This document shows positions 30-59,209 of a stretch of DNA of 64,000 nucleotides, piece by piece (positions within the stretch are counted from its first letter, which is position 1; each line of letters opens with the position of its first letter). Location: assembly GCA_950097015.1 (NCBI GenBank), contig CATNEN010000031.1, positions 2,976,001 through 3,040,000 on the forward strand. Reading direction: 5' to 3'. The notes beneath the pieces are model-generated. The model saw only the letters and a program-made list of their open reading frames with translations. It ran no database searches and had not been told where the DNA came from. The position numbers were made by a program, and so were the translations under genes. This DNA comes from Macrostomum hystrix. Lineage: Eukaryota > Animalia > Platyhelminthes.

Positions 30-2066
30 CTGATCGCAGGTGTGGCCGCCCGCACGGCAGACAGTTTCCCTAGAGACGGCGTTCAACAATACCAGCTTGT
101 CGGATGGCGCCGCCGCCTTCTCGGCGTTGCTGCAGACTCGACCGCGCGGCTTCGGCGCGTCAGAATACAGAGGCCAGCAGATCCGAGTGGAGCTGGCCAT
201 CATGGCCTGGACGCCAAGCGGATTCTGGCCCAGATTGGCCAGTATCCAGGTGGCCAAAGGCCGGCAGGCGAAGCTGCGCGACAGCTTGCTGTACCCGCTG
301 CTGGCTGCGAGGCGCGGCTGCGAGCCCAGCTCCTGCGGCGGAAAATAGGGGCGTCGAATTTATTGGTTTTTGTGATTCTACCTGACTTTGTACCTTATAC
401 TCCTGGATCCTGCCGGATTCTCTCGATTACTCCTAGATTCTCCTAGATTCTCCTAGATTCTCCTGGATTCTTCTAGATTCTCCTAGATTATCCTGGATTC
501 CCTTGGATTCTATTGGATTCTCCTAGATTCTCCTAGATTCTCTTGGATTCTCCTAGATTCTCTTGGATTCTCCTATATTCTCCTATATTCTCCTGGATTC
601 TCTTAGATTCTCCTGGATTTTCTTGATTACTCCTAGATTCTCCTAGATTCTCCTGGATTTTCTTGGATTCTCTTGGATTGTCCTGGATTCTCATGGATTC
701 TCTTGGATTGTCCTGGATTCTCTTGGATTGTCCTGGATTCTCTTGGATTGTCCTGGATTCTCCAAGATTCTCCCAGATTCTGCCTTTTACCTAAGTTACT
801 GACTGATCTACTGACATTAGCAAGCAAATATTCTGAAAGAAATGAACAATAAATATTGAAATCGCAGACCTGGACGGTGCGCACTGTACGGCCGCCATCG
901 TCGGAGCCGGCCAGCAGGAGGCGCAGAGCATCGGCGGCCTCCCTGGACAGCTGAGAATTGTCGCTGTAGGCGTCCGACTCCACTAGCAGGTCTAGCAGTT
1001 CGCGCAGATTCTCCTGCACAAATGCCATGTGAGTCTGCTCGTCCTGGCTTTTGGCAGCCGACGAGGCTGTGAGGGAGGCGGCCAAACTGCCGCCTTGGCT
1101 GAAGTCGCCGGATTCGCCCTCCGATCTGGGCCACTCGGCGCTGGTCGTCTGGTGACTGCGGCGCGGATTTTCCACGGATACGCTTGTAGCTGATTTGCTG
1201 TTTTGAAATCTCTCGCTAATCTTCCTTGCTTGTCAATCCGGACGCCTTCATCTCACTCCTCATGCCTTCATCTCACTCCTCATGCCTTTATCTCACTCCT
1301 CATGCCTTTATCTCACTCCTCATGCCTTTATCTCACTCCTCATGCCTTCATCTCACTCCTCATGCCTTCATCTCACTCCTCATGCCTTCATCTCACTCCT
1401 CATGCCTTCATCTCACTCCACATGCCTTCATCTCACTCCTCATGCCTTTATCTCACTCTTCATGCCTTCATCTCACTCCTCATGCCTTCATCTCACACCT
1501 TATGCCTTCACCTCACCTTTTATGGCTACATTTAAAAGACAAATACAAGGTATTTCTTCTCACCTACGCCTTAGATTAATGCTATTAATCTTCTGCATGT
1601 ACAGGAAGATGACAAAGGTGAACAGGTCCACGCTCTGCTGGTTGCGCACAGCCTCCTGGGCAGATCCTGGAGCCTCCTCGTGCAGCCGGCACTCTAGCTC
1701 GCTCAGCCGGTCCTGGTTAGTGCCGCAGGTCATCAGGCAGGCGTGGAACACGAGCCAGGCCACATCCGGCCCGGTGGCCAGGTGCTCCATTGCAAACAGT
1801 CGCCAGACGGGAAATGTTAGCTGGGGAAATCCGCTTGCGCCTTTGCTCCGCGCGTGCAGCACAAGCTTGCGCAGGTGCTTGGGTGTCAGCCGCTGGCAGG
1901 GGCTGACTGGGAACACGGCGAATGTCAACGGCTCGAAGCGCACCCAGAAACTAATAGAAGATTTGCCGCCGCCGGTTGCCGACAAAGTCGACGCCGCGGT
2001 GGAGCTTGAATAGGACACACCGCTGGACGAATTCCGGCTGCCACTGTACTGGAAGTTTGCCGACAT
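30..2066 (-). CDS. TBCCD1: TBCC domain-containing protein 1 (centrosome/cilium), 5' part; gene continues beyond the left edge
   Basis: Exons 2066-1564, 1197-870, 332-30 joined by GT-AG introns in consistent phase. Peptides FWVRFEP..KHLRKL, DVAWLVF, RNQQSVDLFTFVIFLYMQKIN, HMAFVQENLRELLDLL, SREAADAL and SGYSKLSRSF..LATWILANLGQNPLG match the human TBCCD1 N-terminal half as I recall it. Confidence 0.9.
421..780. repeat. 10-bp minisatellite (TCCTAGATTC and variants) in TBCCD1 intron 2
   Basis: Directly visible tandem units. Confidence 0.95.
1245..1520. repeat. 20-bp minisatellite (CATGCCTTCATCTCACTCCT) in TBCCD1 intron 1
   Basis: About 13 visible tandem units. Confidence 0.95.
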
Positions 2067-2128
2067 GCTTGGGGCTGTTCTGGCTGACTGCCGGCGGCTG
2101 CAAATTAATGCGCTTAGGTATGAGCGAT

Positions 2129-2196
2129 TGGCTGCAGTGGTCAGAGCACAACGGGGTCAGATCTCCTACCGGGAGGTCTTCAGTTCGAATCTTGGA
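2129..2196 (+). mobile_element. tRNA-like Pol III head (SINE-type A-box/B-box) directly upstream of the 35-bp satellite
   Basis: TGGCTGCAGTGG (A-box-like) and AGTTCGAATC (B-box, 2182-2191); no complete cloverleaf. Confidence 0.5.
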
Positions 2197-2329
2197 CCAC
2201 AGGAAAAAATTAGCATGCTATAATGATCCCTTCCTATGCAACTATAATTCCGCATACTTCCTTAATTCTATTAGACGGAACTTTAATCCTACTCGAAAAA
2301 TCCTCTTGTTGGAACTTTGATCCTACTTC

Positions 2330-5300
2330 AATGATCCCATTCATGTGGCTTTAATCCTACTCCAAAGATCCCTTCCATGTAGCTTTAATCCTACTCCAAA
2401 GATCCCTTCCATGTAGCTTTAATCCTACTCCAAAGATCCCTCTCCATGTAACTTTAATCCTACTCCAAAGATCCCTTTCCATGTGGCTTTAATCCTACCC
2501 CAAAGATCCCTTCCATGTAACTTTAATCCTACTCCAAAGATCCCTTTGCATGTAACTTTAATCCTACTCCAAAGATACCTTTCCATGTAACTTTAATCCT
2601 ACTCCAAAGATCCCTTTCCATGTAACTTTAATCCTACTCCAAAGATTCCTTTCCATGTAACTTTAATCCTACTCCAAAGATCGCTTTCCATGTAACTTTA
2701 ATCCTACTCCAAAGATCCCTTTCCATGTAACTTTAATCCTACTCCAAAGATCCATTCCCATGTAACTTTAATCCTACTCCAAAGATCCCTTTCCATGTAA
2801 CTTTAATCCTACTCCAAAGATCCCTTTCCATGTAACTTTAATTCTACTCCAAAGATCCCTTTCCATGTAACTTTAATCCTACTCCAAAGATTCCTTTCCA
2901 TGTAGCTATAATCCTACTCCAAAGATTCCTTTCCATGTAACTTTAATCCTACTCCAAAGATCCCTTTCCATGTAACTTTAATCCTACTCCAAAGATCCCT
3001 TTCCATGTAACTTTAATCCTACTCCAAAGATCCCTTTCCATGTAGCTTTAATCCTACTCCAAAGATCCCTTTCCATGTAACTTTAATCCTACTCCAAAGA
3101 TCCCTTTCCATGTAACTTTAATCCTACTCCAAAGATCCATTCCCATATAACTTTAATCCTACTCCAAAGATCCCTTTCCATGTAACTTTAATCCTACTCC
3201 AAAGATCCATTCCCATGTAACTTTAATCCTACTCCAAAGATCCCTTTCCATGTAACTTTAATCCTACTCCAAAGATCCCTTTCCATGTAACTTTAATCCT
3301 ACTCCAAAGATCCCTTTCCATGTAACTTTAATCCTACTCCAAAGATTCCTTTCCATGTAACTATAATCCTACTCCAAAGATCCCTTTCCATGTGGCTTTA
3401 ATCCTACCCCAAAGATCCCTTCCATGTAACTTTAATCCTACTCCAAAGATCCCTTTGCATGTAACTTTAATCCTACTCCAAAGATCCCTTTTCATGTAAC
3501 TTTAATCCTACTCCAAAGATCCCTTTCCATGTAACTTTAATCCTACTCCAAAGATCCCTTTCATGTGGCTTTAATCCTACTCCAAAGATCCCTTTCCATG
3601 TAACTTTAATCCTACTCCAAAGATCCCTTTCCATGTGGCTTTAATCCTACTCCAAAGATCCCTTTGCATGTAACTTTAATCCTACTCCAAAGATCCCTTT
3701 CCATGTAACTTTAATCCTACTCCAAAGATCCCTTTCCATGTAACTTTAATCCTACTCCAAAGATCCATTCCCATGTAACTTTAATCCTACTCCAAAGATC
3801 CCTTTCCATGTAACTTTAATCCTACTCCAAAGATTCCTTTCCATGTAACTTTAATCCTACTCCAAAGATTCCTTTCCATGTAACTTTAATCCTACTCCAA
3901 AGATCCCTTTCCATGTAACTTTAATCCTACTCCAAAGATCCCTTTCCATGTAACTTTAATCCTACTCCAAAGATCCATTCCCATGTAACTTTAATCCTAC
4001 TCCAAAGATCCCTTTCCATGTAACTTTAATCCTACTCCAAAGATACCTTTCCATGTAACTTTAATCCTACTCCAAAGATTCCTTTCCATGTAACTTTAAT
4101 CCTACTCCAAAGATTCCTTTCCATGTAACTTTAATCCTACTCCAAAGATCCCTTTCCATGTAACTTTAATCCTACTCCAAAGATCCCTTTCCATGTAACT
4201 TTAATCCTACTCCAAAGATCCATTCCCATGTAACTTTAATCCTACTCTAAAGATCCCTTTCCATGTAACTTTAATCCTACTCCAAAGATCCCTTTCCATG
4301 TAACTTTAATCCTACTCCAAAGATTCCTTTCCATGTAACTTTAATCCTACTCCAAAGATCCCTTTCCATGTAACTTTAATCCTACTCCAAAGATCCCTTT
4401 CCATGTAACTTTAATCCTACTCCAAAGATCCCTTTCCATGTAACTTTAATCCTACTCCAAAGATCCCTTTCCATGTAACTTTAATCCTACTCCAAAGATC
4501 CCTTTCCATGTAGCTTTAATCCTACTCCAAAGATCCCTTTCCATGTAACTTTAATCCTACTCCAAAGATCCCTTTCCATGTAACTTTAATCCTACTCCAA
4601 AGATCCATTCCCATATAACTTTAATCCTACTCCAAAGATCCCTTTCCATGTAACTTTAATCCTACTCCAAAGATCCATTCCCATGTAACTTTAATCCTAC
4701 TCCAAAGATCCCTTTCCATGTAACTTTAATCCTACTCCAAAGATCCCTTTCCATGTAACTTTAATCCTACTCCAAAGATCCCTTTCCATGTAACTTTAAT
4801 CCTACTCCAAAGATTCCTTTCCATGTAACTATAATCCTACTCCAAAGATTCCTTTCCATGTAACTTTAATCCTACTCCAAAGATCCATTCCCATGTAACT
4901 TTAATCCTACTCCAAAGATCCCTTTCCATGTAACTTTAATCCTACTCCAAAGATACCTTTCCATGTAACTTTAATCCTACTCCAAAGATCCCTTTCCATG
5001 TAACTTTAATCCTACTCCAAAGATTCCTTTCCATGTAACTTTAATCCTACTCCAAAGATCGCTTTCCATGTAACTTTAATCCTACTCCAAAGATCCCTTT
5101 CCATGTAACTTTAATCCTACTCCAAAGATCCATTCCCATGTAACTTTAATCCTACTCCAAAGATCCCTTTCCATGTAACTTTAATCCTACTCCAAAGATC
5201 CCTTTCCATGTAACTTTAATCCTACTCCAAAGATTCCTTTCCATGTAACTTTAATCCTACTCGAAAGATCCCTTTCCATGTAACTTTAATCCTACTCCAA

Positions 5301-8300
5301 AGATCCCTTTCCATGTAACTTTAATCCTACTCCAAAGATCCCTTTCCATGTAACTTTAATCCTACTCCAAAGATCCCTTTCCATGTAACTTTAATCCTAC
5401 TCCAAAGATCCCTTTCCATGTAGCTTTAATCCTACTCCAAAGATCCCTTTCCATGTAACTTTAATCCTACTCCAAAGATCCCTTTCCATGTAACTTTAAT
5501 CCTACTCCAAAGATCCATTCCCATGTAACTTTAATCCTACTTCAAAGATCCATTTCCATGTAACTTTAATCCTACTCCAAAGATCCCTTTTCATGTAACT
5601 TTAATCCTACTCCAAAGATCCCTTTCCATGTAACTTTAATCCTACTCCAAAGATCCATTCCCATGTAACTTTAATCCTACTCCAAAGATCCCTTTCCATG
5701 TAACTTTAATCCTACTCCAAAGATCCCTTTCCATGTAACTTTAATCCTACTCCAAAGATCCATTCCCATGTAACTTTAATCCTACTCCAAAGATCCCTTT
5801 CCATGTAACTTTAATCCTACTCCAAAGATCCCTTTCCATGTAACTTTAATCCTACTCCAAAGATCCCTTTCCATGTAACTTTAATCCTACTCCAAAGATC
5901 CATTCCCATGTAACTTTAATCCTACTCCAAAGATCCCTTTCCATGTAACTTTAATCCTACTCCAAAGATCCCTTTCCATGTAACTTTAATCCTACTCCAA
6001 AGATCCATTCCCATGTAACTTTAATCCTACTCTAAAGATCCCTTTCCATGTAACTTTAATCCTACTCCAAAGATCCCTTTCCATGTAACTTTAATCCTAC
6101 TCCAAAGATCCCTTTCCATGTAACTTTAATCCTACTTCATAGATCCCTTTCCATGTAACTTTAATCCTACTTCATAGATCCCTTTCCATGTAACTTTAAT
6201 CCTACTTCATAGATCCCTTTCCATGTAACTTTAATCCTACTCCAAAGATCCCTTTCCATGTAACTTTAATTCTACTCCAAAGATCCCTTTTCATGAAACT
6301 TTAATCCTACTCCAAAGATTCCTTTCCATGTAACTTTAATCCTACTCCAAAGATCCCTTTCCATGTAACTTTAATTCTACTCCAAAGATCCCTTTCCATG
6401 TAACTTTAATCCTACTCCAAAGATCCCTTTCCATGTAACTTTAATCCTACTCCAAAGATCCCTTTCCATGTAACTTTAATCCTACTCCAAAGATTCCTTT
6501 CCATGTAACTATAATCCTACTCCAAAGATTCCTTTCCATGTAACTTTAATCCTACTCCAAAGATCCATTCCCATGTAACTTTAATCCTACTCCAAAGATC
6601 CCTTTCCATGTAACTTTAATCCTACTCCAAAGATACCTTTCCATGTAACTTTAATCCTACTCCAAAGATCCCTTTCCATGTAACTTTAATCCTACTCCAA
6701 AGATTCCTTTCCATGTAACTTTAATCCTACTCCAAAGATCGCTTTCCATGTAACTTTAATCCTACTCCAAAGATCCCTTTCCATGTAACTTTAATCCTAC
6801 TCCAAAGATCCATTCCCATGTAACTTTAATCCTACTCCAAAGATCCCTTTCCATGTAACTTTAATCCTACTCCAAAGATCCCTTTCCATGTAACTTTAAT
6901 CCTACTCCAAAGATTCCTTTCCATGTAACTTTAATCCTACTCGAAAGATCCCTTTCCATGTAACTTTAATCCTACTCCAAAGATCCCTTTCCATGTAACT
7001 TTAATCCTACTCCAAAGATCCCTTTCCATGTAACTTTAATCCTACTCCAAAGATCCCTTTCCATGTAACTTTAATCCTACTCCAAAGATCCCTTTCCATG
7101 TAGCTTTAATCCTACTCCAAAGATCCCTTTCCATGTAACTTTAATCCTACTCCAAAGATCCCTTTCCATGTAACTTTAATCCTACTCCAAAGATCCATTC
7201 CCATGTAACTTTAATCCTACTTCAAAGATCCATTTCCATGTAACTTTAATCCTACTCCAAAGATCCCTTTTCATGTAACTTTAATCCTACTCCAAAGATC
7301 CCTTTCCATGTAACTTTAATCCTACTCCAAAGATCCATTCCCATGTAACTTTAATCCTACTCCAAAGATCCCTTTCCATGTAACTTTAATCCTACTCCAA
7401 AGATCCCTTTCCATGTAACTTTAATCCTACTCCAAAGATCCATTCCCATGTAACTTTAATCCTACTCCAAAGATCCCTTTCCATGTAACTTTAATCCTAC
7501 TCCAAAGATCCCTTTCCATGTAACTTTAATCCTACTCCAAAGATCCCTTTCCATGTAACTTTAATCCTACTCCAAAGATCCATTCCCATGTAACTTTAAT
7601 CCTACTCCAAAGATCCCTTTCCATGTAACTTTAATCCTACTCCAAAGATCCCTTTCCATGTAACTTTAATCCTACTCCAAAGATCCATTCCCATGTAGCT
7701 TTAATCCTACTCCAAAGATCCCTTTCCATGTAACTTTAATCCTACTCCAAAGATCCCTTTCCATGTAACTTTAATCCTACTCCAAAGATCCATTCCCATG
7801 TAACTTTAATCCTACTTCAAAGATCCATTTCCATGTAACTTTAATCCTACTCCAAAGATCCCTTTTCATGTAACTTTAATCCTACTCCAAAGATCCCTTT
7901 CCATGTAACTTTAATCCTACTCCAAAGATCCATTCCCATGTAACTTTAATCCTACTCCAAAGATCCCTTTCCATGTAACTTTAATCCTACTCCAAAGATC
8001 CCTTTCCATGTAACTTTAATCCTACTCCAAAGATCCATTCCCATGTAACTTTAATCCTACTCCAAAGATCCCTTTCCATGTAACTTTAATCCTACTCCAA
8101 AGATCCCTTTCCATGTAACTTTAATCCTACTCCAAAGATCCCTTTCCATGTAACTTTAATCCTACTCCAAAGATCCATTCCCATGTAACTTTAATCCTAC
8201 TCCAAAGATCCCTTTCCATGTAACTTTAATCCTACTCCAAAGATCCCTTTCCATGTAACTTTAATCCTACTCCAAAGATCCATTCCCATGTAACTTTAAT

Positions 8301-11300
8301 CCTACTCTAAAGATCCCTTTCCATGTAACTTTAATCCTACTCCAAAGATCCCTTTCCATGTAACTTTAATCCTACTCCAAAGATCCCTTTCCATGTAACT
8401 TTAATCCTACTTCATAGATCCCTTTCCATGTAACTTTAATCCTACTTCATAGATCCCTTTCCATGTAACTTTAATCCTACTTCATAGATCCCTTTCCATG
8501 TAACTTTAATCCTACTCCAAAGATCCCTTTCCATGTAACTTTAATTCTACTCCAAAGATCCCTTTTCATGAAACTTTAATCCTACTCCAAAGATTCCTTT
8601 CCATGTAACTTTAATCCTACTCCAAAGATCCCTTTCCATGTAACTTTAATTCTACTCCAAAGATCCCTTTCCATGTAACTTTAATCCTACTCCAAAGATC
8701 CCTTTCCATGTAACTTTAATCCTACTCCAAAGATCCCTTTCCATGTAACTTTAATCCTACTCCAAAGATTCCTTTCCATGTAACTATAATCCTACTCCAA
8801 AGATTCCTTTCCATGTAACTTTAATCCTACTCCAAAGATCCATTCCCATGTAACTTTAATCCTACTCCAAAGATCCCTTTCCATGTAACTTTAATCCTAC
8901 TCCAAAGATACCTTTCCATGTAACTTTAATCCTACTCCAAAGATCCCTTTCCATGTAACTTTAATCCTACTCCAAAGATTCCTTTCCATGTAACTTTAAT
9001 CCTACTCCAAAGATCGCTTTCCATGTAACTTTAATCCTACTCCAAAGATCCCTTTCCATGTAACTTTAATCCTACTCCAAAGATCCATTCCCATGTAACT
9101 TTAATCCTACTCCAAAGATCCCTTTCCATGTAACTTTAATCCTACTCCAAAGATCCCTTTCCATGTAACTTTAATCCTACTCCAAAGATTCCTTTCCATG
9201 TAACTTTAATCCTACTCGAAAGATCCCTTTCCATGTAACTTTAATCCTACTCCAAAGATCCCTTTCCATGTAACTTTAATCCTACTCCAAAGATCCCTTT
9301 CCATGTAACTTTAATCCTACTCCAAAGATCCCTTTCCATGTAACTTTAATCCTACTCCAAAGATCCCTTTCCATGTAGCTTTAATCCTACTCCAAAGATC
9401 CCTTTCCATGTAACTTTAATCCTACTCCAAAGATCCCTTTCCATGTAACTTTAATCCTACTCCAAAGATCCATTCCCATGTAACTTTAATCCTACTTCAA
9501 AGATCCATTTCCATGTAACTTTAATCCTACTCCAAAGATCCCTTTTCATGTAACTTTAATCCTACTCCAAAGATCCCTTTCCATGTAACTTTAATCCTAC
9601 TCCAAAGATCCATTCCCATGTAACTTTAATCCTACTCCAAAGATCCCTTTCCATGTAACTTTAATCCTACTCCAAAGATCCCTTTCCATGTAACTTTAAT
9701 CCTACTCCAAAGATCCATTCCCATGTAACTTTAATCCTACTCCAAAGATCCCTTTCCATGTAACTTTAATCCTACTCCAAAGATCCCTTTCCATGTAACT
9801 TTAATCCTACTCCAAAGATCCCTTTCCATGTAACTTTAATCCTACTCCAAAGATCCATTCCCATGTAACTTTAATCCTACTCCAAAGATCCCTTTCCATG
9901 TAACTTTAATCCTACTCCAAAGATCCCTTTCCATGTAACTTTAATCCTACTCCAAAGATCCATTCCCATGTAACTTTAATCCTACTCCAAAGATCCATTC
10001 CCATGTAACTTTAATCCTACTTCAAAGATCCATTTCCATGTAACTTTAATCCTACTCCAAAGATCCCTTTCCATGTAACTTTAATCCTACTCCAAAGATC
10101 CCTTTCCATGTAACTTTAATCCTACTCCAAAGATCCATTCCCATGTAACTTTAATCCTACTCCAAAGATCCCATTCCATGTAACTTTAATCCTACTCCAA
10201 AGATCCCTTTCCATGTAACTTTAATCCTACTCCAAAGATTCCTTTCCATGTAACTTTAATTCTACTCCAAAGATCCCTTTCCATGTAACTTTAATCCTAC
10301 TCCAAAGATCCCTTTCCATGTAACTTTAATCCTACTCCAAAGATCCCTTTTCATGAAACTTTAATCCTACTTCAAAGATCCCTTTCCATGTAACTTTAAT
10401 CCTACTCCAAAGATCCCTTTCCATGTAACTTTAATCCTACTCCAAAGATTCCTTTCCATGTAACTTTAATTCTACTCCAAAGATCCCTTTCCATGTAACT
10501 TTAATCCTACTCCAAAGATTCCTTTCCATGTAACTTTAATTCTACTCCAAAGATCCCTTTCCATGTAACTTTAATCCTACTCCAAAGATTCCTTTCCATG
10601 TAACTTTAATCCTACTCCAAAGATCCCTTTCCATGTAACTTTAATCCTACTCCAAAGATTCCTTTCCATGTAACTTTAATTCTACTCCAAAGATCCCTTT
10701 TCATGAAACTTTAATCCTACTCCAAAGATTCCTTTCCATGTAACTTTAATCCTACTCCAAAGATCCCTTTCCATGTAACTTTAATCCTACTCCAAAGATT
10801 CCTTTCCATGTAACTTTAATCCTACTTCAAAGATTCCTTTCCATGTAACTTTAATCCTACTCCAAAGATCCCTTTCCATGTAACTTTAATTCTACTCCAA
10901 AGATCCCTTTTCATGAAACTTTAATCCTACTCCAAAGATTCCTTTCCATGTAACTTTAATCCTACTCCAAAGATCCCTTTCCATGTAACTTTAATTCTAC
11001 TCCAAAGATCCCTTTCCATGTAACTTTAATCCTACTCCAAAGATCCCTTTCCATGTAACTTTAATCCTACTCCAAAGATCCCTTTCCATGTAACTTTAAT
11101 CCTACTCCAAAGATTCCTTTCCATGTAACTTTAATCCTACTCCAAAGATCCCTTTCCATGTAACTTTAATCCTACTCCAAAGATCCCTTTTCATGAAACT
11201 TTAATCCTACTCCAAAGATCCCTTTCCATGTAACTTTAATCCTACTCGAAAGATCCCTTTCCATGTAACTTTAATTCTACTCCAAAGATTCCTTTCCATG

Positions 11301-11624
11301 TAACTTTAATTCTACTCCAAAGATCCCTTTCCATGTAACTTTAATTCTACTCCAAAGATCCCTTTCCATGTAACTTTAATCCTACTTCAAAGATCCCTTT
11401 CCATGTAACTTTAATCCTACTCGAAAGATCCCTTTCCATGTAACTTTAATTCTACTCCAAAGATTCCTTTCCATGTAACTTTAATTCTACTCCAAAGATC
11501 CCTTTCCATGTAACTTTAATTCTACTCCAAAGATCCCTTTCCATGTAACTTTAATCCTACTTCAAAGATCCCTTTCCATGTAACTTTAATCCTACTCCAA
11601 AGATCCCTTTTCATGAAACTTTAA
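2330..11624 (+). repeat. 35-bp satellite array, about 265 copies, with higher-order repeats
   Basis: Unit TTTAATCCTACTCCAAAGATCCCTTTCCATGTAAC; diagnostic variants recur at 1680-bp and 2275-bp spacing; degenerate units at 2220-2330. Confidence 0.98.
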
Positions 11625-12995
11625 TCCCAACACACAGGCCTCCTATGTGATGAAACCTTTCCTTATCAGTGGGCTCCTAACCAGTTCTGAAGTGCCAAAT
11701 CGACAGATAAGTTTTCCTGATCCTAATAAGCAAAAGAAATGAAATATAAAAATGCAGGAAATTCCATCGCTAAGCGAAAAAAAGACTCACCAAACAATCT
11801 GAATTGTCGCACTAAAAATCTGATAAAGCATTAAAAGTACACAATCAACTGTCAAGAGAACATACTTCTTTATCTGGCAATAATTTAATAATTAAACTAA
11901 ACTTAAAAGTTAGCATTACTAGTAAAGCAAAGTTGATAATGCATCACAGAAGGACAAGAATAAAATATCTGCAAGCATATAAGCAAAGCGCACAGAAGAC
12001 AAGACAGTGAAATCAGATTAGAAAGATTTAGTGTGCCGGACCAGACTTGATTAATGCGCTAGTTGAAAACCATATAGAATATGAATAATGCTACATTGCG
12101 TGCTGGCAATTGCGAGTTAAAATACGGAAATAACGCAATTTGATATACCGAACATTAATTGTAGCCAAACGAAGCCTATGTCTGAAACATTATGGAGGAA
12201 GACGTCTGTAATTGGAAGAAATAGATAAATAGATGAATAGGTTTTACTTCGTAACTATGGAAGAAGTGCATAGAGACTAGCTTCACAAACTGTCGAACAG
12301 TTAAACATAGGTAACTATGAAAATAAATCATGCTCACATGCTCACACCGAACGGAATCACCTAGAAGGTGCCCTGTAAAAAATTCGGCTGCTTCTTCGGC
12401 GGTTTTTTTTGCAAAATAGGAGTGGAATCTACCGAAATTCCCCCTATCTCGCAAGAGTTAAAGAAACCACCCAGGAAGCAGCCGATGTGATCGTAAAGTG
12501 TGCGGAAACCGCCGAAAAATCACCCGAACCAGTGGCCCATGAGACAACCAGAGAATTCTTTACGGTCGATTCCTCGGCGGTTTCTGAGCATGGAATCTCA
12601 CGAATTGGATGATTCTTTGGGTGATTCCATTTCGCCACCAAGAAGTACCGAGAAACCGTCCAGTTGGGTAGATTCCAAGCATGGAATAATCCCATTGGTC
12701 AGTTTCCAGCGTTCGGCTGTTTCTTTTTCTGGAAACACCGCAGATTCCAACTGGAATCACCCAAAGAAACATCATAATTTTTTAGCGGGTGTAGCGAATT
12801 ACCTCCAACGAATTGGGGAATGAGAAGAAACAAATGGGATAATATAAGGATGGGAAGTGGGCCTATAATCAAATAGATATAGGAATGAGATATAGGGATG
12901 GGGGAATGTGGAGAGCTGTTAACAGTAGGACTAAACCAAGCCATTTTGCCACCGTTTTTATCCCAAGGGGAATTTCCTCCCCCTGACAATTTTTG

Positions 12996-53200: not shown

Positions 53201-55070
53201 TCGGCTGCATATCTAGCCTAATTAGGGCTGGTGTAATCAGTTATTATTATTATTATCATATTATCACTAAGACCAGAAACCATCTGCACCATTCGGAGGT
53301 TGAGTGGCAGAGCGGTCTAACGCGTTTGCCTCTCGCACCAAGGTCCCTGAGCTCGATTCCTCGGCGAGGCCACGTTCATTTGGGCGCAGCCGCGGAGAAA
53401 GGGCTTGGAGGCTTGTCATGCAATCTCCAAGGCACAGTGAAAGTGCACACTGCCTGACGATGAGAAAGTCAGGGCAGATGTACACACCTGTGTGAGCGTG
53501 TGCCTGCGTTCGGTATCTGTGTGCGTGTGTGCTCAGGAGTCAGCGAATCGGGCAGAATTGCCTCCTCGCTGGCTGCGTGTCTAGTGTCACCAAATGATGT
53601 GCCATTGCCCGCAGCCCTCTTAAAATTAAAATTATTATTATGTGCACCATTGCAGCTGAAGTACAATATACAGTACACACACGGCACTGGCATCACGGCC
53701 GTGACCTACGACGCTGTGCTGCGCACCGTTTCGGTTGGCTCATACCTGCAGCAGACATTCGCGCTTAGCTACAATTTTGTAAGCCACTTTTTCGTTATCT
53801 TGTCCAGCATTTTACGCACATAGATCAAGGGGCATATAGAAAAATGAATAAAATAATACGATATTTATGTTTGCACAAATAAAGCTTGACAAGCATCCAT
53901 GGAGTCATTTACAAGGAAGCTAATATCTTCCAAACACTCTACAAAGTTTGTGCTGAAAAAAAGTAAAAATCTCCGTAGTGTATTTTTCCAAGAAACTTAA
54001 ATTACCGTCATTCTACTCCTAGAGGTTCCTGCTATTTGTATCCGTATTAGCTATTATCATTGTCTGTTTGCACTATATCGAATGATTATGCACTTCCTCA
54101 GAGCGGCAGCGGGTCTAGCGACCTGTACGATAGAAGCGGCAATCCGGGCTACTTGACGGGCCGGCCGCTACTCGCCGGCCAGGTGAGCGTTAATTCGACC
54201 GTTGGCCCGGTTCCCAACCCCAGCCGATGGCGCGTCACCCTGCCACCAGTGAGCGCCGACGGGTCCTGCAACGACGCAGAGATCGGTGTCACAGCCGGCC
54301 AGACGGTTCTGTTCGGCGAGAACATTCGCGCCACCTGTCTGCGCAGCCTGTCGTGGAACTCCACAGTCAAACAGCTGACGACCGCGTGCTCCGATGTGAA
54401 CGCTGCAATTCAGCGCTCGCTAATCAGTTTGGGCTCTGCGGGCAATATTGCGCTGGCCGCGTTCGGCAACGCCAGTTCTAGCAGCTCGGGCGACTGGTTC
54501 AGGATCAGCGTGGATTCCTGCAGCGGGGTTCCTTCTTCGACTGCAACAGCCTGCACTGGCATGATCCTGGGCGGTCGACTGGAGATCCTGATGGCCCGAG
54601 CCGGCTCTGTGTCCAATGCGCAGAACAAGCTGGTGGCAGCCCGATTGTCCTGCGAGGTTGGAACGATTGCGTTTCCTGTAAGTTGGCGCCTTGACAACAA
54701 ATCTGTCGGAGCTGCTGCATTTACTTGCTATTAACACCTTCAAATGGTTGTCAGTCAAAGTTTAAAATGACCGTTACTTCACGCCAATCCGCTTCTCCAG
54801 TGCGCTGCCGGCTCCTGCACGGCAGCCACCGCGACCCTCAGCAGGGTGAACTTTCTGACTTCGTACACCGTAGCTTTCATCGACGTGAGCGATCAGCCGC
54901 TGGAGGGCGCGAAGCAGCGCCCGGTCTACCTGCTCAGGCTGCCCACCGACTTTTTCTATCCACTCTACACTAGTGGAGGCACTGCTACCACTGGATACTC
55001 ACTCATGTCCCACTGCCTTCTACCGCTGCTACTTCTGGCTTCAGCTGCCACCAGCAGCAACTGGCTGTAG
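50262..55070 (+). CDS. TCTN1: Tectonic family protein (transition-zone MKS module), about 600 aa, 9 exons
   Basis: Exons 50262-50325, 51043-51166, 51240-51346, 51461-51609, 52414-52637, 52741-52906, 53656-53778, 54102-54677, 54801-55070 (1803 nt, phases consistent). Signal peptide, CTCDLTSNACDMNCCCDPDC, RSGNPGYLTGRPLLAG, VLFGENIRATC, AFIDVS and RLPTDFFYPL, plus a hydrophobic C-terminal tail. The paralogue number is uncertain. Confidence 0.93.
51655..52224. repeat. 25-bp minisatellite (CATCCTGAGCTCGAATCTCTACTGT) in TCTN intron 4
   Basis: About 22 visible units. Confidence 0.96.
52996..53252 (+). mobile_element. SINE family A copy (5'-truncated) in a TCTN intron
   Basis: B-box GGGGGTTCGACTC, core and (TTA)n tail match the 25384 copy. 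Confidence 0.8.
53295..53641 (+). mobile_element. SINE family B copy, apparently full length
   Basis: Head GTGGCAGAGCGGTCTAACG..GAGCTCGATTCC; (ATT)n tail ends about 14 nt before the next exon. Confidence 0.85.
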
Positions 55071-56052
55071 ACAATTACAGAGCTAGGCGTTGCCTCGAAA
55101 AGGTCGCGAATCTTTCGTCGCGTTTTTCTGACATAATTATTATTGTAAACTGTATGGAAATACTACGGAGGGTATAGCACATGCCTACATATTTTCAGTG
55201 CTCCAAAAATGTTCAACCAATCGCTATTTAAATTCAGAAGACGGGCTAAATTTGTACATTTCTCTATCCGATGAAACAACTTCCAACTCCCGTGGTTTTC
55301 CCCCAGGGGTAAAATTACCTTGTCTTACTACTGTTAGTGACCTAGACATTGATAATAAAGAATATTCGTTAATAAAGAAAATTAAATATTTGTGAATATT
55401 TTATCTGAAACATAAAACTATATAGAGCGCAGGCGCTCATTGTCGTATGATACGTACACATGCCTAACAGAACCGCGTTGTACAATTAAGCTGTGCATAT
55501 AATCGATATTTTTTGCTAATCTTTAAATGTCTGTCTGTGTATTCCTCTAGCATTCCTTAAATTAATGTAAACAAAAATACTTGGTTACAGAAAATAATTT
55601 TACGAGGTTGTTACATGCAGATGGCCCAAAAGCACATACTGTCCCCATGCATACAAATTTAAATTGAGATCGATGTCTGTGACTATTTTATTTGCGTATT
55701 TGATATATCACAAAGCATGTTAGTTCTCGCTGTTTCGATTAGTTGCAGTAAGTGTCAACTGTCCCTATATGCTTTGTATACACCAACTAAAATATATATC
55801 TATTTAACAATGTGACGCGAAAATTTAAAATTTCTATAAGAATTAACTATGCTACTCGTAATAGCAGTTGATCATACCGAAGCATGTAAAAGTAAATCCG
55901 AAAACCATCCAAATGAGAAGCCACAGATTGTATATAAAGTAGTGATTTTTTCTAGTGTACTGTTTGTTATGTAGTGAACGAAGGGAACAACGGATTTGTT
56001 GGCAGATTCCAAATTGAGCAGTTATCCTTTTTGTGATAGCTTTGTGTCCGTA

Positions 56053-56144
56053 TATTTATAGGTAGCTGATGTTAAATCGAAAGTTCTAGAAAACACGGAC
56101 TATAGAAGGTTCTAGAATATTCTGGCCACAGAAGGTTCTAGAAA
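56053..56144 (-). promoter_or_regulatory. Heat-shock-type promoter: three perfect HSEs plus TATAAATA
   Basis: cGAAa-gTTCt-aGAAa (56078-56092), aGAAg-gTTCt-aGAAt-aTTCt (56104-56123), aGAAg-gTTCt-aGAAa (56130-56144); TATAAATA on the minus strand at 56060-56053. Confidence 0.7.
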
Positions 56145-56739
56145 CTACTAGCTTCCTCACTGCACTACTCATAGTGGCAGTATGCGTAAATTAGCATTCA
56201 GTCAGTCAATACACAACACTGTTTTGTGGTACAGTACCTGTATAATAATGCAGAAAAAAAAGACATGTAGATCCTATATATGAAGCTCCCCCCCATCTTG
56301 CTTATTTTATAACAAGCAGACAAACCAATGCAGCTTACTATAAAAGATCTATAAAAGAACCAGCTTTATGAATCGAGCAAAAGTCGTGGCTTAACATTCT
56401 GGCAATAATTTATATGCTAAAATACAAAACTAGCCGTTATTGCAAGCTATAGACAATACAATTTTGGTTGTGTTTAAAGTGACATTATACAAACTATATT
56501 AGTTCGCGTACAGCTCGGCTTATGGTGCAAAACTGAGTACAAAAATGTCGGTCCAGTATAGAAAAGAGCCATCATGCAGCCGCGATTAATTAGTTGTACA
56601 CACAGACGTGAACTGCGCGCAGACATACAAAAAAAGAATATAGGCCAAATATACGTTGTGTAAATACGTTGTACATAGGTTTAGTTTGTTAATGTGCAAT
56701 CCAACGATGCTAAACATGTCTGAAAGTAACGTGAGAAAG

Positions 56740-57100
56740 GCGAAATTCAAGCAGCTGCAGCATTCTGAATTAGCGATTCCGATCGCATTCCATGCATGGC
56801 TGGGTGTTCGATTCGCGTTTTCTGACCGATTGCATAAGCTGCATGCGTCAGCCAGGCAGGCTTTCCAACATAGCGAGCCCGCGTCCCGCCCACGATCGCC
56901 AACATATAGCAGCGCTGATCTCGCAGTGGGCACGAAGGTGAGCAGCGGCTTTGGACATCCAGAACGGCTGTACTTGGCAGTACGAATCCATGCGTTTTCC
57001 GGGCATGTGTCCTGCAAACTGCAGTCGCCGCTTCTGGAAGTCCCATTGGGTGTGGCTGTTTCGAGAGCTACGGGTAATGGATGCCAAGAGTGGCGCCTGG
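56740..57100 (-). mobile_element. Degenerate RTE-like LINE 3' fragment
   Basis: Translates RRLQFAGH..SYCQVQ, homologous to the RRLQLAGH..SYCLQPVQ motif of the 33584 copy; frameshifted. Confidence 0.6.
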
Positions 57101-58726
57101 GTGACATTAATTTGTTTAAACTTCAAACAAAAAAGAAGCTGATAAAAATATTGTACTTTTAATGTTAAGTCGTGAATATCGATCGTTATAGTGCCAAAAA
57201 TGACCTAATCTTAATATTTCCTTATGCATGAATAGCCTTTTTCCTACACCACCGTGTAATACACTATCACTTTTGAAAGTGCATTGTCAACGTAAGCATC
57301 GTATTTTATGATTTCCCACCCATCAGAATCCTTGAATTGGTCATAACGCAATTTGTCGTAATCCTTTTTTCTTCGATTCATTTTTAAACCTCGCGCGACT
57401 TATTTCATTTCAAAATTCTGCATTTGCAGCACGGGCACATTCATGCTTTTTTACAAATAGACATTTCGTTTCGTGTTTGCCCCAAAAGGCTTATTGTCTG
57501 ATCCAAAGCGTCTATCTAGTATCTAGATATCTATCTATATAAAAAACCTATGGAAACTTATAGCCATAGGTTTAAATGTAAAAATACACATGTACAGCAC
57601 TACAGCTACAGTAAGTAATGTAGCTAAAATGTGTAGAATATTTTTACTTATATGCTGCTCATTATTCTCACAAGTAAAATGTAAAAATGCTTTATTATCA
57701 GTGGCACAGTGTGTAAGCTTCGATATTTACATCGCTATGCATTGTGTAAAAATACAGACAAATATATGAATTATTTTTAACCCACTATATAAGGCCTAGG
57801 CCCTATTCCTAAAATGTTATTTTTCACTCATCTAGAATCATAGAATGTAATGATAGCTAATTGACTAATGCTAATTTATAGAAACAGTAAAGGAAGGATC
57901 GAGATAGTATTTTTATGTCTGTAGGATTGCTGAATCATCAAGTTTGCAAGCACTTTTTGCTTTTTTTAGTTTGTAGGCCTAGCACTGCTGCCTAGGCCTA
58001 GTTAAAAAAAAGCATAGTATTTCAGCTATCTTTCTGGTTAATATTACTAATGTGAATCATTACTGCAATTTTCAACTTCTTATAATTTTGCCTTAGACCC
58101 CCTGGTTATATTTTATGTGGTTTGGAAAATTATAGAACTCTTATGCGAAATCTGTGCCAAATATTTCTACTACAAGTGCTAGGCCTATGGGTGCAAATAC
58201 TGAATAGTATCCAAAAATTAGGATGCACATCCACATGACATAGGATGTGAAGTCACTTTAAGATTTTTCACTGGGATACACAATTCTTTTGATGGTATTT
58301 TTGGATTGCCTAGATTCCTGATTAGGGTAGGTGTCAAGGAAGTGAAAAATGTCTGTGAGGGGCACTTAGTTACCAATTAATGGGCTGCCATAAAAAGATT
58401 TTCTAACAGTTTCCTGTCCCTCACTCCTAGTGATCCTTGCATAGAACTGGCTGGTTATGAGCGCTGTTTTTTTAGTTTGATCATTGTGTGTGCTGTTTAA
58501 AAATATTTAAAGATATTTGATGGGTATAGCCTGAATTACAAGTCACAGCGAACAGTTGACAGGCCTAAGCATACTATAACTTTCTTATGTGCAATATGTA
58601 CTTTTTACCAAATACCATTTATTAAAGTCTAATTGTAGCTCGTAGGCATAAAGGGCTTTACCATCGCATAGCAAATCAATAAACCCACAAGATTTGATCC
58701 CTCACTATTTCAGCCATCCATTTCAA

Positions 58727-59209
58727 ATGAGCCACCAATTGCTACACTTGAAGGATCTGCGCCCAATGCAGAAGAATGTCAATGTTCAGTTCATTGTGCT
58801 AGATGTGTACGAACCGACCCGCACCAAGGACGGCAGCGAGGTGCGCAATGTGAGCATCGCCGATCGCACTGGCCGCATGACACTCGCTCTGTGGAATGAA
58901 TACGGTCGCCAAGTTCATCCTGGTGACATTTGCCGCGTCCTGAATGGCTTAACCACCCTGTTCAAGCAGGAGATGACGCTGAATGTTGGCAAGAATGGCG
59001 AGTTACAGAAGACCGGCGATTTCATGATGGTATTCTCTGAGAAGCCCAACCTTAGCGAAGTGTCACCGGAGATTCTGGCCAAATATATGGAGATGAATGC
59101 TGGCATATCTGTGCCTATAGCTGCCACAGCTGGCGGCTCATCCGCCTCCGCCCCCGCCTCCAGATCGCGCGGCGGACCCTCGTTTGGCAGCGGCTGGGGC
59201 AAGGCTTAA
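58727..59209 (+). CDS. NABP2: SOSS complex subunit B (single-stranded DNA-binding OB-fold protein, NABP1/2 family), 160 aa, single coding exon
   Basis: LKDLRPMQKNVNVQFIVL, TKDGSEVR, ADRTG, GDICR and LQKTGDFMMVFSEKPNLSE match hSSB1/2. ATG at 58727 (the track's start at 58694 is a TTG upstream of a splice acceptor). Confidence 0.93.
   Translation: MSHQLLHLKDLRPMQKNVNVQFIVLDVYEPTRTKDGSEVRNVSIADRTGRMTLALWNEYGRQVHPGDICRVLNGLTTLFKQEMTLNVGKNGELQKTGDFMMVFSEKPNLSEVSPEILAKYMEMNAGISVPIAATAGGSSASAPASRSRGGPSFGSGWGKA

What the first reader, a model, noticed from the sequence alone, without database searches (positions are those of the whole stretch)
55400..56360. Orphan heat-shock promoter: three perfect HSEs and a TATAAATA with no downstream ORF
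Seen: three perfect inverted nGAAn arrays (3+4+3 units) within 67 bp (56078-56144), with TATAAATA 17 nt away on the minus strand. Established: this is the layout of HSF-driven hsp70-type promoters. Seen: no ORF of 60 aa or more lies downstream on the minus strand before the 3' end of the convergent TCTN gene. Inference: it drives a heat-induced non-coding RNA antisense to the TCTN 3' end, or it is the relic of a lost hsp gene. Alternatively, via the plus-strand TATAAAA pair at 56339 and 56350, it could drive a long outron to the SOSS-B acceptor at 58713.
Basis: partly seen in the sequence, partly recalled or inferred. Interest (0 to 1): 0.75.

Follow-up and report, generated by a model that had tools for sequence, protein, structure and literature searches.

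The report
Solo LTR carrying a heat-shock promoter
The "orphan" heat-shock promoter is real, but it is the leftover 254-bp end piece (solo LTR) of a young jumping gene of the flatworm Macrostomum hystrix, and close relatives of that element in M. lignano were shown in 2025 to be switched on by heat, so this is a new member of a known kind.

Summary
Three perfect HSEs (3+4+3 units, 56078-56144) lie 17 nt from a minus-strand TATAAATA, and no ORF of 60 aa or more follows.

It is not an orphan gene promoter. The block lies inside a 254-bp solo LTR (56218->55965, minus strand sense). The LTR has TG..CA ends and a perfect 5-bp target-site duplication.

The genome, identified as Macrostomum hystrix by exact assembly statistics, holds at least 25 LTR hits of this family:
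- nine LTR-flanked copies of a compact Ty3/gypsy element (up to 4516 bp) with one gag-PR-RT-RH-IN ORF and a tRNA-Ser(GCU) primer site;
- four solo LTRs;
- one fragment and older relatives.

LTR pairs differ by 0-2 nt. Every young copy keeps all HSE units, and all but one also keep the TATA box.

The closest protein relative (60% identity) is an M. lignano element. Its homologous 245-bp LTR also has three HSEs, and they fit the motif published for Mlig-id115|Mag. That family is heat-induced more than 250-fold in an HSE-dependent way (PMC12801592).

No ORF follows because LTR-LTR recombination removed the element's interior.

The lost-hsp-gene reading is refuted. A heat-induced read-through RNA at this locus remains possible but untested.

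The scan has flagged similar HSE-bearing LTRs elsewhere in this genome; the followed-up ones belong to a different family (332-bp LTR).

The parts
55965..56218 (-). Solo LTR, 254 bp. Its sense strand is the window's minus strand. Termini are TGTTG...ATAACA (TG..CA).
   Evidence: It is 98-99% identical over its full length to the paired LTRs of nine LTR-flanked copies elsewhere in the genome. The boundaries were read.
55960..55964 (.). Target-site duplication, one copy (CTGTT on plus, AACAG on minus)
   Evidence: The identical 5-mer lies directly on both sides of the LTR. The other copies have their own, different 5-bp duplications.
56219..56223 (.). Target-site duplication, second copy (CTGTT)
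56130..56144 (-). Distal HSE, 3 perfect units (LTR positions about 75-89)
   Evidence: Conserved in all young copies and aligned with an HSE in the M. lignano LTR.
56104..56123 (-). Middle HSE, 4 perfect units
56078..56092 (-). Proximal HSE, 3 perfect units
   Evidence: The core TTTCTAGAACTTTC is identical in the M. lignano relative.
56053..56060 (-). TATA box TATAAATA (LTR positions 159-166), which marks the U3/R border region
   Evidence: The block ATAAATATACG is conserved in the M. lignano LTR.
56025..56034 (-). Predicted transcription start, about 26-35 nt after the first base of the TATA box. This is inferred, not shown.
   Evidence: Inferred from TATA spacing only. There are no RNA data.

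Best explanation
Window 55965-56218 is a solo LTR of a young, compact Ty3/gypsy LTR retrotransposon of Macrostomum hystrix. The family's U3 region is a self-contained heat-shock promoter: three HSEs in 67 bp, then TATAAATA 17 nt downstream. In full copies this promoter drives a single gag-protease-RT-RNaseH-integrase ORF that starts inside the primer-binding site. The most likely mechanism is that heat-activated host HSF trimers bind the LTR's HSEs and fire transcription of the element's genomic RNA. This ties replication to stress, as shown experimentally for homologous or analogous elements in M. lignano. At this locus an element inserted into single-copy intergenic DNA between the tectonic-like and SOSS-B-like genes, antisense to both. 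Recombination between its two LTRs then deleted the interior. That left one LTR, both target-site duplicates, and therefore a complete promoter with no ORF behind it. Shown here: repeat status, LTR boundaries, TSD, element anatomy, HSE conservation, and homology to the M. lignano LTR. Inferred: HSF binding, heat induction, and the transcription start.
For: Repeat status: the block has 24 hits and the whole LTR 25 hits in the genome. Most are direct pairs 2.9-4.3 kb apart.

LTR boundaries: the match to other copies stops exactly at 55964/56218. The termini are TG..CA and the 5-bp TSD is perfect. The flanks are single-copy.

Element anatomy: a full copy is 4516 bp with a 1320-aa ORF. Pfam finds, in order, protease 297-376, RVT_1 475-634, RNase H 697-829, Integrase_H2C2 934-986 and rve 1012-1100. 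A polypurine tract sits just before the 3' LTR. A 15-nt primer site matches the 3' end of four host tRNA-Ser(GCU) genes.

Recent activity: LTR pairs differ by 0-2 nt, and the TSDs are distinct and perfect in all pairs but one, where they differ by 1 nt. Three more solo LTRs have perfect TSDs.

HSE conservation: all 23 young LTRs, from 95% identity up, keep all four overlapping 3-unit HSE matches, and 22 of the 23 keep TATAAATA.

Host factor: the genome encodes at least 4 HSF DNA-binding-domain genes.

M. lignano relative: the closest protein is from M. lignano at 60% identity. Its locus has a 245-bp LTR with three HSEs, the same primer site and the same TATA block. Its LTR aligns to the window LTR 6 SD above shuffles.

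Experimental precedent: PMC12801592 shows more than 250-fold heat induction of four HSE-bearing M. lignano families and loss of reporter induction when the HSEs of Mlig-id115|Mag are mutated.
Against: There are no expression data for M. hystrix, so heat induction here rests on homology and motif conservation. The M. lignano paper itself notes that two HSE-bearing copia families were not induced, so HSEs alone do not guarantee a response. That L041 is a copy of the tested family Mlig-id115 is inferred. The inference rests on the HSE count and the published motif nTTCnaGAAnnTTCc. The LTR has no AATAAA or ATTAAA, so the R/U5 borders are unknown.
Confidence: 0.9

Rival explanations
1. The solo LTR has been co-opted. 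On heat shock it fires a non-coding RNA along the minus strand towards the 3' end of the tectonic-like gene, or its HSEs act as a bidirectional enhancer on the SOSS-B-like gene 2.5 kb away. Either way a host gene gains heat regulation.
For: The promoter is complete, with all HSE units perfect and the TATA box intact. It sits in unique intergenic DNA. Solo LTRs elsewhere are known to drive read-through transcripts (general knowledge).
Against: The first minus-strand AATAAA is at 55692. The tectonic-like gene's plus-strand poly(A) signals are at 55354-55381. A normally terminated LTR transcript of about 350 nt would therefore not overlap that mRNA. The insertion is very young (98-99% identical to active copies), which leaves little time for selection. 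In M. lignano only two solo LTRs of such families lay within 2 kb of host genes, and those genes were only mildly induced. No Rfam family matches here.
Confidence: 0.08
2. The block is the relic promoter of a lost host heat-shock gene.
For: The layout resembles the host hsp70 promoters: three HSEs, then TATAAAA 14 bp after the proximal 4-unit HSE.
Against: The block has sharp LTR boundaries, TG..CA ends and a TSD, and at least 24 near-identical copies that flank gag-pol ORFs. Similarity to the four hsp70 upstream regions is limited to the HSE motifs themselves, at most 15 nt.
Confidence: 0.01
3. The HSE-like arrays are functionless sequence in the LTR, and the element is transcribed constitutively or by other factors.
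For: Two HSE-bearing copia families in M. lignano were not heat-induced.
Against: The HSEs and the TATA box are the best-conserved blocks between the M. hystrix and M. lignano LTRs, while most of the rest has diverged. All young copies keep every unit. A more distant M. lignano relative (43% aa) has the same primer site and TATAAATA but no HSE, which shows the array is a lineage-specific, retained feature. Mutating such HSEs abolished induction in M. lignano.
Confidence: 0.08

Closest known systems
Mlig-id115|Mag and the other HSE-bearing Ty3/Mdg4 LTR retrotransposons of Macrostomum lignano (Ustyantsev et al., Mob DNA 2025, PMC12801592)
   Same: Same genus and same superfamily. Both have three canonical HSEs upstream of a TATA box in a short LTR. 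The nearest M. lignano element (L041) shares 60% protein identity, the tRNA-Ser primer site, a start codon inside that site, the LTR termini and the TATA block. Its HSEs fit the published motif nTTCnaGAAnnTTCc.
   Different: Different species; the paper does not mention M. hystrix. The middle HSE is widened to 4 units and the box is TATAAATA rather than CATAAATA. The LTRs have diverged strongly outside the motifs. Heat induction is untested here. The window holds only a solo LTR.
ONSEN (ATCOPIA78) of Arabidopsis and other Brassicaceae
   Same: An LTR retrotransposon whose LTR carries HSEs and is activated through the host heat-shock factor pathway (as summarised in PMC12801592).
   Different: It is Ty1/copia, from a plant, and has unrelated sequence. 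This is convergence, not homology.
Helitron1_CE of Caenorhabditis elegans
   Same: A transposon that disperses HSEs around the genome and is heat-activated via HSF (cited in PMC12801592).
   Different: It is a rolling-circle DNA transposon with no LTR.
Second HSE-bearing Ty3/gypsy family of the same genome (334-bp LTR; L038)
   Same: It also has three HSEs (3+3+4 units) followed by TATAAATA, and its LTRs begin TGTTGTG. It is young: the two LTRs of the copy examined are 100% identical.
   Different: The polyproteins share only 29% identity. The LTRs share nothing beyond HSE and TATA motifs of at most 16 nt. The arrays were therefore either gained independently or are very old.
Host hsp70 promoters (four intronless genes on contig C33)
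   Same: Three HSEs, including a proximal 4-unit array, 14 bp before TATAAAA.
   Different: The HSEs are spread over about 165 bp rather than 67 bp. They are followed by a 640-aa HSP70 ORF. They show no sequence homology to the LTR outside the motifs.

Membership tests
Solo LTR of an LTR retrotransposon | Sequence identical in extent to the terminal direct repeats of full elements elsewhere in the genome | tested here: met
   Window 55964-56218 matches both LTRs of eight paired copies at 98-99%, and the match ends at the LTR borders.
Solo LTR of an LTR retrotransposon | TG...CA termini and a short target-site duplication directly flanking a single LTR | tested here: met
   Termini are TGTTG...ATAACA. 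The 5-bp AACAG (minus strand) lies on both sides. Three other solo LTRs have their own perfect 5-bp TSDs.
Solo LTR of an LTR retrotransposon | No element-internal sequence adjacent to it | tested here: met
   BLAST of window 54501-58500 against eight full loci finds only the LTR. The flanks are single-copy.
Ty3/gypsy (Metaviridae) LTR retrotransposon | Pol domain order protease - RT - RNase H - integrase | tested here: met
   Pfam positions on the 1320-aa ORF: 297-376, 475-634, 697-829, 934-1100.
Ty3/gypsy (Metaviridae) LTR retrotransposon | tRNA primer-binding site after the 5' LTR and a polypurine tract before the 3' LTR | tested here: met
   A 15-nt match to the 3' end (+CCA) of host tRNA-Ser(GCU) starts 2 nt after the LTR. 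A purine run abuts the 3' LTR.
Mag clade of Ty3/gypsy | Phylogenetic placement of the RT with GyDB Mag references | not tested
   No reference sequences were to hand. The assignment is only inferred, because the nearest M. lignano relative fits the description of Mlig-id115|Mag.
HSE-driven heat-activated LTR retrotransposons (Mlig-id115 / ONSEN kind) | Canonical nGAAnnTTCnnGAAn elements in U3, upstream of the TATA box and start site | tested here: met
   Arrays of 3+4+3 units at LTR positions 75-141, with TATA at 159. Present in all 23 young LTRs.
HSE-driven heat-activated LTR retrotransposons (Mlig-id115 / ONSEN kind) | Strong transcriptional induction by heat | not testable with these tools
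   No M. hystrix expression data are available here. Induction is shown only for M. lignano families.
HSE-driven heat-activated LTR retrotransposons (Mlig-id115 / ONSEN kind) | Induction depends on intact HSEs and on HSF | not testable with these tools
   Shown by HSE mutation in M. lignano. The host has at least 4 HSF-domain genes.
Host heat-shock gene promoter (hsp70 type) | A heat-shock protein ORF downstream, at a unique host locus | tested here: not met
   No ORF of 60 aa or more lies downstream. The block is a multi-copy repeat. There is no homology to hsp70 upstream regions beyond the motifs.

The most novel reading that the evidence does not exclude
The three-HSE promoter was already present in the common ancestor of the M. 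hystrix and M. lignano elements and has been kept by selection while the rest of the LTR diverged. Heat-coupled replication would then be an old, stable strategy in Macrostomum rather than a recent gain in M. lignano. In addition, solo LTRs such as this one would seed new heat-inducible transcription units next to host genes. Here those genes are a ciliary tectonic-like gene and a SOSS-B-like DNA-damage gene.
Probability: 0.35. Interest if true: 0.45.

Novelty: new member of a known kind. Interest (0 to 1): 0.3.

Why it matters
The result removes a false lead: there is no orphan heat-shock gene and no dedicated heat-shock lncRNA here.

It also adds a second species to the only animal case in which canonical HSEs in an LTR have been shown to confer heat induction. 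The M. hystrix family is homologous to a three-HSE M. lignano family at protein, primer-site and LTR level. The HSE and TATA blocks are the conserved islands in an otherwise diverged LTR. This argues that the HSE array is maintained by selection across species, a point the 2025 paper does not address.

The M. hystrix genome holds at least three separate HSE-bearing repeat families. Four-unit HSEs occur 163 times per strand, against 24 for the reversed-pattern control. Transposons therefore supply a large share of this genome's strongest HSF sites. That matters for any annotation of its heat-shock regulon.

Tried and rejected
- **Capture of a host hsp70 promoter by the LTR.** Rejected. Short-word BLAST of the LTR against all four hsp70 loci gives only matches of 15 nt or less, which are the HSE motifs themselves.
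- **One HSE-LTR family in the genome.** Rejected. The 334-bp-LTR family (L038) shares 29% polyprotein identity and no LTR homology with this one.
- **A known structured RNA in 54900-58800.** None found at E <= 0.1.
- **An insertion into another repeat.** Rejected. The flanks are unique, apart from a short high-copy repeat about 700 bp away.
- **Supplementary sequences of the 2025 paper.** Not held, so the identity of L041 with Mlig-id115 could not be checked base by base.
- **Literature check of primer tRNA use in the Mag clade.** It gave nothing usable.
- **Earlier-findings look-ups by sequence and by specific words.** Both were blank.
- **Operators' rules.** Copies were only compared pairwise. 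The contig is not human.

Full report
**1. The observation**

A pattern search finds four GAAnnTTCnnGAA matches in the whole 64-kb window. All lie in 56079-56143. The expectation is 0.88 per window, and no shuffle out of 100 reached four. With their flanking bases the arrays are:
- 56078-56092, 3 units;
- 56104-56123, 4 units;
- 56130-56144, 3 units.

TATAAATA is on the minus strand at 56060->56053, 17 nt from the nearest HSE. The longest minus-strand ORF downstream is 46 aa.

**2. The block is a repeat, and the window copy is a solo LTR**

A 131-bp query around the block finds 24 places in the genome at 85-100% identity. Most are direct pairs 2.9-4.3 kb apart.

BLAST of window 54501-58500 against eight such loci matches only 55964-56218. 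Read on the minus strand, the unit starts TGTTG and ends ATAACA. The same 5-mer, AACAG (CTGTT on plus), lies on both sides at 56219-56223 and 55960-55964.

The flanks are single-copy, apart from a short high-copy repeat near 55145-55290. This is the signature of a solo LTR: an element inserted, duplicated 5 bp of target, and later lost its interior by recombination between its two LTRs. That explains why no ORF follows the promoter.

**3. The element**

In LTR-flanked copies the LTRs enclose one long ORF on the same strand as the TATA box.

The longest form is 4516 bp with a 1320-aa ORF. Pfam finds, in order:
- aspartic protease, 297-376;
- reverse transcriptase, 475-634;
- RNase H, 697-829;
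- integrase zinc domain, 934-986;
- integrase core, 1012-1100.

This is the Ty3/gypsy domain order. Upstream of the protease the ORF has Cys/His knuckles typical of gag.

Two nucleotides after the 5' LTR lies a 15-nt primer-binding site that contains the start codon. It is complementary to the 3' end plus CCA of four host genes that ARAGORN calls tRNA-Ser(GCU). A purine run abuts the 3' LTR.

**4. Census and age**

| Class | Count | Notes |
|---|---|---|
| Uninterrupted LTR-flanked copies | 8 | Two of 4516 bp; four of about 4008 bp; one of 3511 bp; one of 3148 bp |
| Interrupted LTR-flanked copy | 1 | On C41, about 10.8 kb, shared TSD; it also lacks element positions 3260-3760 (integrase region) |
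| Solo LTRs with perfect TSDs | 4 | Includes the window copy |
| 3' fragment | 1 | |
| Older relatives | 2 | LTRs 73-78% identical, retaining one or two 3-unit HSE matches |

In the one ~4008-bp copy whose protein was read (L011), the in-frame deletion removes 169 aa covering the integrase core. The other three have ORFs of the same length (1150-1151 aa) and sit at different sites with different TSDs. They were therefore probably mobilised in trans. All shortened forms keep the frame open.

The LTRs of a pair differ by 0-2 nt out of 256, so the family has been active very recently. The window LTR is 98-99% identical to these copies and carries a private 2-bp deletion between the proximal HSE and the TATA box.

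All 23 young LTRs keep all four overlapping 3-unit HSE matches. All but one keep TATAAATA.

**5. Organism**

The tools report the genome as 220,453,370 bases in 42 contigs, with one contig of 13,505,968 bases. Table 1 of Wiberg et al. 2023 gives exactly these figures for Macrostomum hystrix: total length, contig number and N50 (PMC10468722). The genome is therefore the M. hystrix assembly. Earlier notes of this scan had suggested this; here it was checked. The contig is not human.

**6. What is already known**

Ustyantsev et al. (Mob DNA 2025, PMC12801592) report for M. lignano that Ty3/Mdg4 families of the Mag, CsRN1 and Gmr1/Osvaldo clades carry canonical HSEs in their LTRs. Four such families are induced more than 250-fold at 37 C. 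Mutating the HSEs of the Mlig-id115|Mag LTR (three HSEs, motif nTTCnaGAAnnTTCc) abolishes heat induction of a reporter. They also discuss ONSEN in plants and Helitron1_CE in C. elegans. The paper does not mention M. hystrix.

**7. Link to the M. lignano elements**

A word-based protein search with the 1320-aa ORF gives a partial M. lignano protein as the best hit (60% identity). A second M. lignano protein follows at 43%. Below these come many compact gypsy elements of other animals at 40% or less.

*Closest relative.* The first protein's locus (L041, NIVC01002686.1) holds two element units in tandem that share an LTR. That LTR is 245 bp and begins with the same 12 nt as the window LTR. It has three HSEs that all fit nTTCnaGAAnnTTCc. 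It has the block ATAAATATACG where M. hystrix has its TATA box. It is followed by the same tRNA-Ser primer site with the start codon inside it.

A global alignment of the two LTRs scores 6 SD above shuffles. The identical islands are the termini, the HSEs (the proximal one 14 of 14) and the TATA block. L041 is therefore very probably a copy of, or close kin to, Mlig-id115|Mag. This is an inference, because the paper's sequences are not held.

*More distant relative.* The element at 43% identity (L042) has the same kind of primer site and a TATAAATA, but no HSE. The array is therefore a derived feature of the lineage that includes the M. hystrix family and L041.

**8. Comparison with host promoters and other families**

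The four intronless hsp70 genes on contig C33 have three HSEs spread over about 165 bp. The proximal one is a 4-unit array 14 bp before TATAAAA. The layout is alike, but BLAST finds only the motifs themselves, at most 15 nt. There is thus no sign that the LTR captured a host promoter.

The genome also encodes at least four HSF DNA-binding domains.

A second young gypsy family has a 334-bp LTR, a 1420-aa ORF and 3+3+4 HSE units plus TATAAATA. It shares only 29% polyprotein identity with this one and no LTR homology. This is the family that earlier agents of the scan followed up elsewhere in the genome.

A third dispersed repeat carries a 5-unit HSE about 70 bp before a TATA-like run.

Genome-wide, four-unit HSEs occur 163 times per strand, against 24 for the reversed control. 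Many of these sites lie in such repeats.

**9. Mechanism and what remains open at this locus**

The most likely working is that heat-activated HSF trimers bind the three HSEs in U3. Transcription then starts roughly 30 nt after the TATA box, near window 56030 on the minus strand. In full copies the RNA serves both as gag-pol mRNA and as the replication template.

The solo LTR keeps a complete promoter, so it may fire on heat shock and read into the left flank. The first minus-strand AATAAA is at 55692. The tectonic-like gene's own poly(A) signals are at 55354-55381 on the plus strand. A normally terminated RNA would therefore be about 350 nt and would not overlap that mRNA.

An enhancer effect on the SOSS-B-like ORF at 58694 is possible but untested. 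That ORF's OB-fold match is only weak, below the Pfam cut-off. No Rfam family matches the region.

**10. Verdict**

The feature is a solo LTR of a heat-shock-promoter retrotransposon. This kind was proven in the sister species in 2025, so it is a new member of a known kind.

The modest new point is cross-species homology of the three-HSE LTR, with the HSE and TATA islands conserved.

Noticed in passing
L011, L013, L014, L018 (G000 contigs C15, C1, C7, C39): Four copies of about 4008 bp have ORFs of the same length (1150-1151 aa). In the copy whose protein was read (L011), an in-frame 169-aa deletion removes the integrase core. The four copies sit at different sites with different perfect TSDs and near-identical LTRs. 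An integrase-less derivative that keeps its frame open has therefore probably spread in trans, and it outnumbers the two full-length copies.
   Followed up: partly
L038:2566-7633 (G000:C1:3620565-3625632): A second young Ty3/gypsy family has a 334-bp LTR with 3+3+4 HSE units and TATAAATA. Its 1420-aa ORF is only 29% identical to the family studied here. Its four-unit HSE recurs in pairs about 4734 bp apart on several contigs.
   Followed up: partly
L039:4229-4340 (G000:C1:8280228-8280340) and at least 40 further places: A third dispersed repeat carries a perfect 5-unit HSE about 70 bp before a TATAAAATTATAAA run. Copies are 95-98% identical. The element type was not determined.
   Followed up: partly
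window 55145-55290: A short dispersed repeat of about 100-140 bp lies just downstream of the tectonic-like gene's last ORFs. It has at least 405 first-look candidates genome-wide at 74-83% identity, and looks MITE- or SINE-like.
   Followed up: no
L041:1-8266 (M. lignano NIVC01002686.1): The M. lignano relative occurs as two element units in tandem that share an LTR (period 4281 bp, 99.9% identical), followed by a short tandem repeat of about 62 bp.
   Followed up: no
L019 + L004 (G000:C41:2823244-2834018): One copy of the family is split by an insertion of about 6.5 kb inside its ORF, while its outer TSD (TTTGT) is intact. The inserted sequence was not examined.
   Followed up: no
G000:C33:3867893-3873260 (L026/L027): Two intronless hsp70 genes lie head to head, 1.7 kb apart, with near-identical promoters. 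Two more copies with the same proximal promoter are on the same contig.
   Followed up: partly
window 2000-12000: A long stretch has extreme GC skew (about -0.68) at 36% GC, which suggests a satellite or a strongly strand-biased tandem repeat.
   Followed up: no
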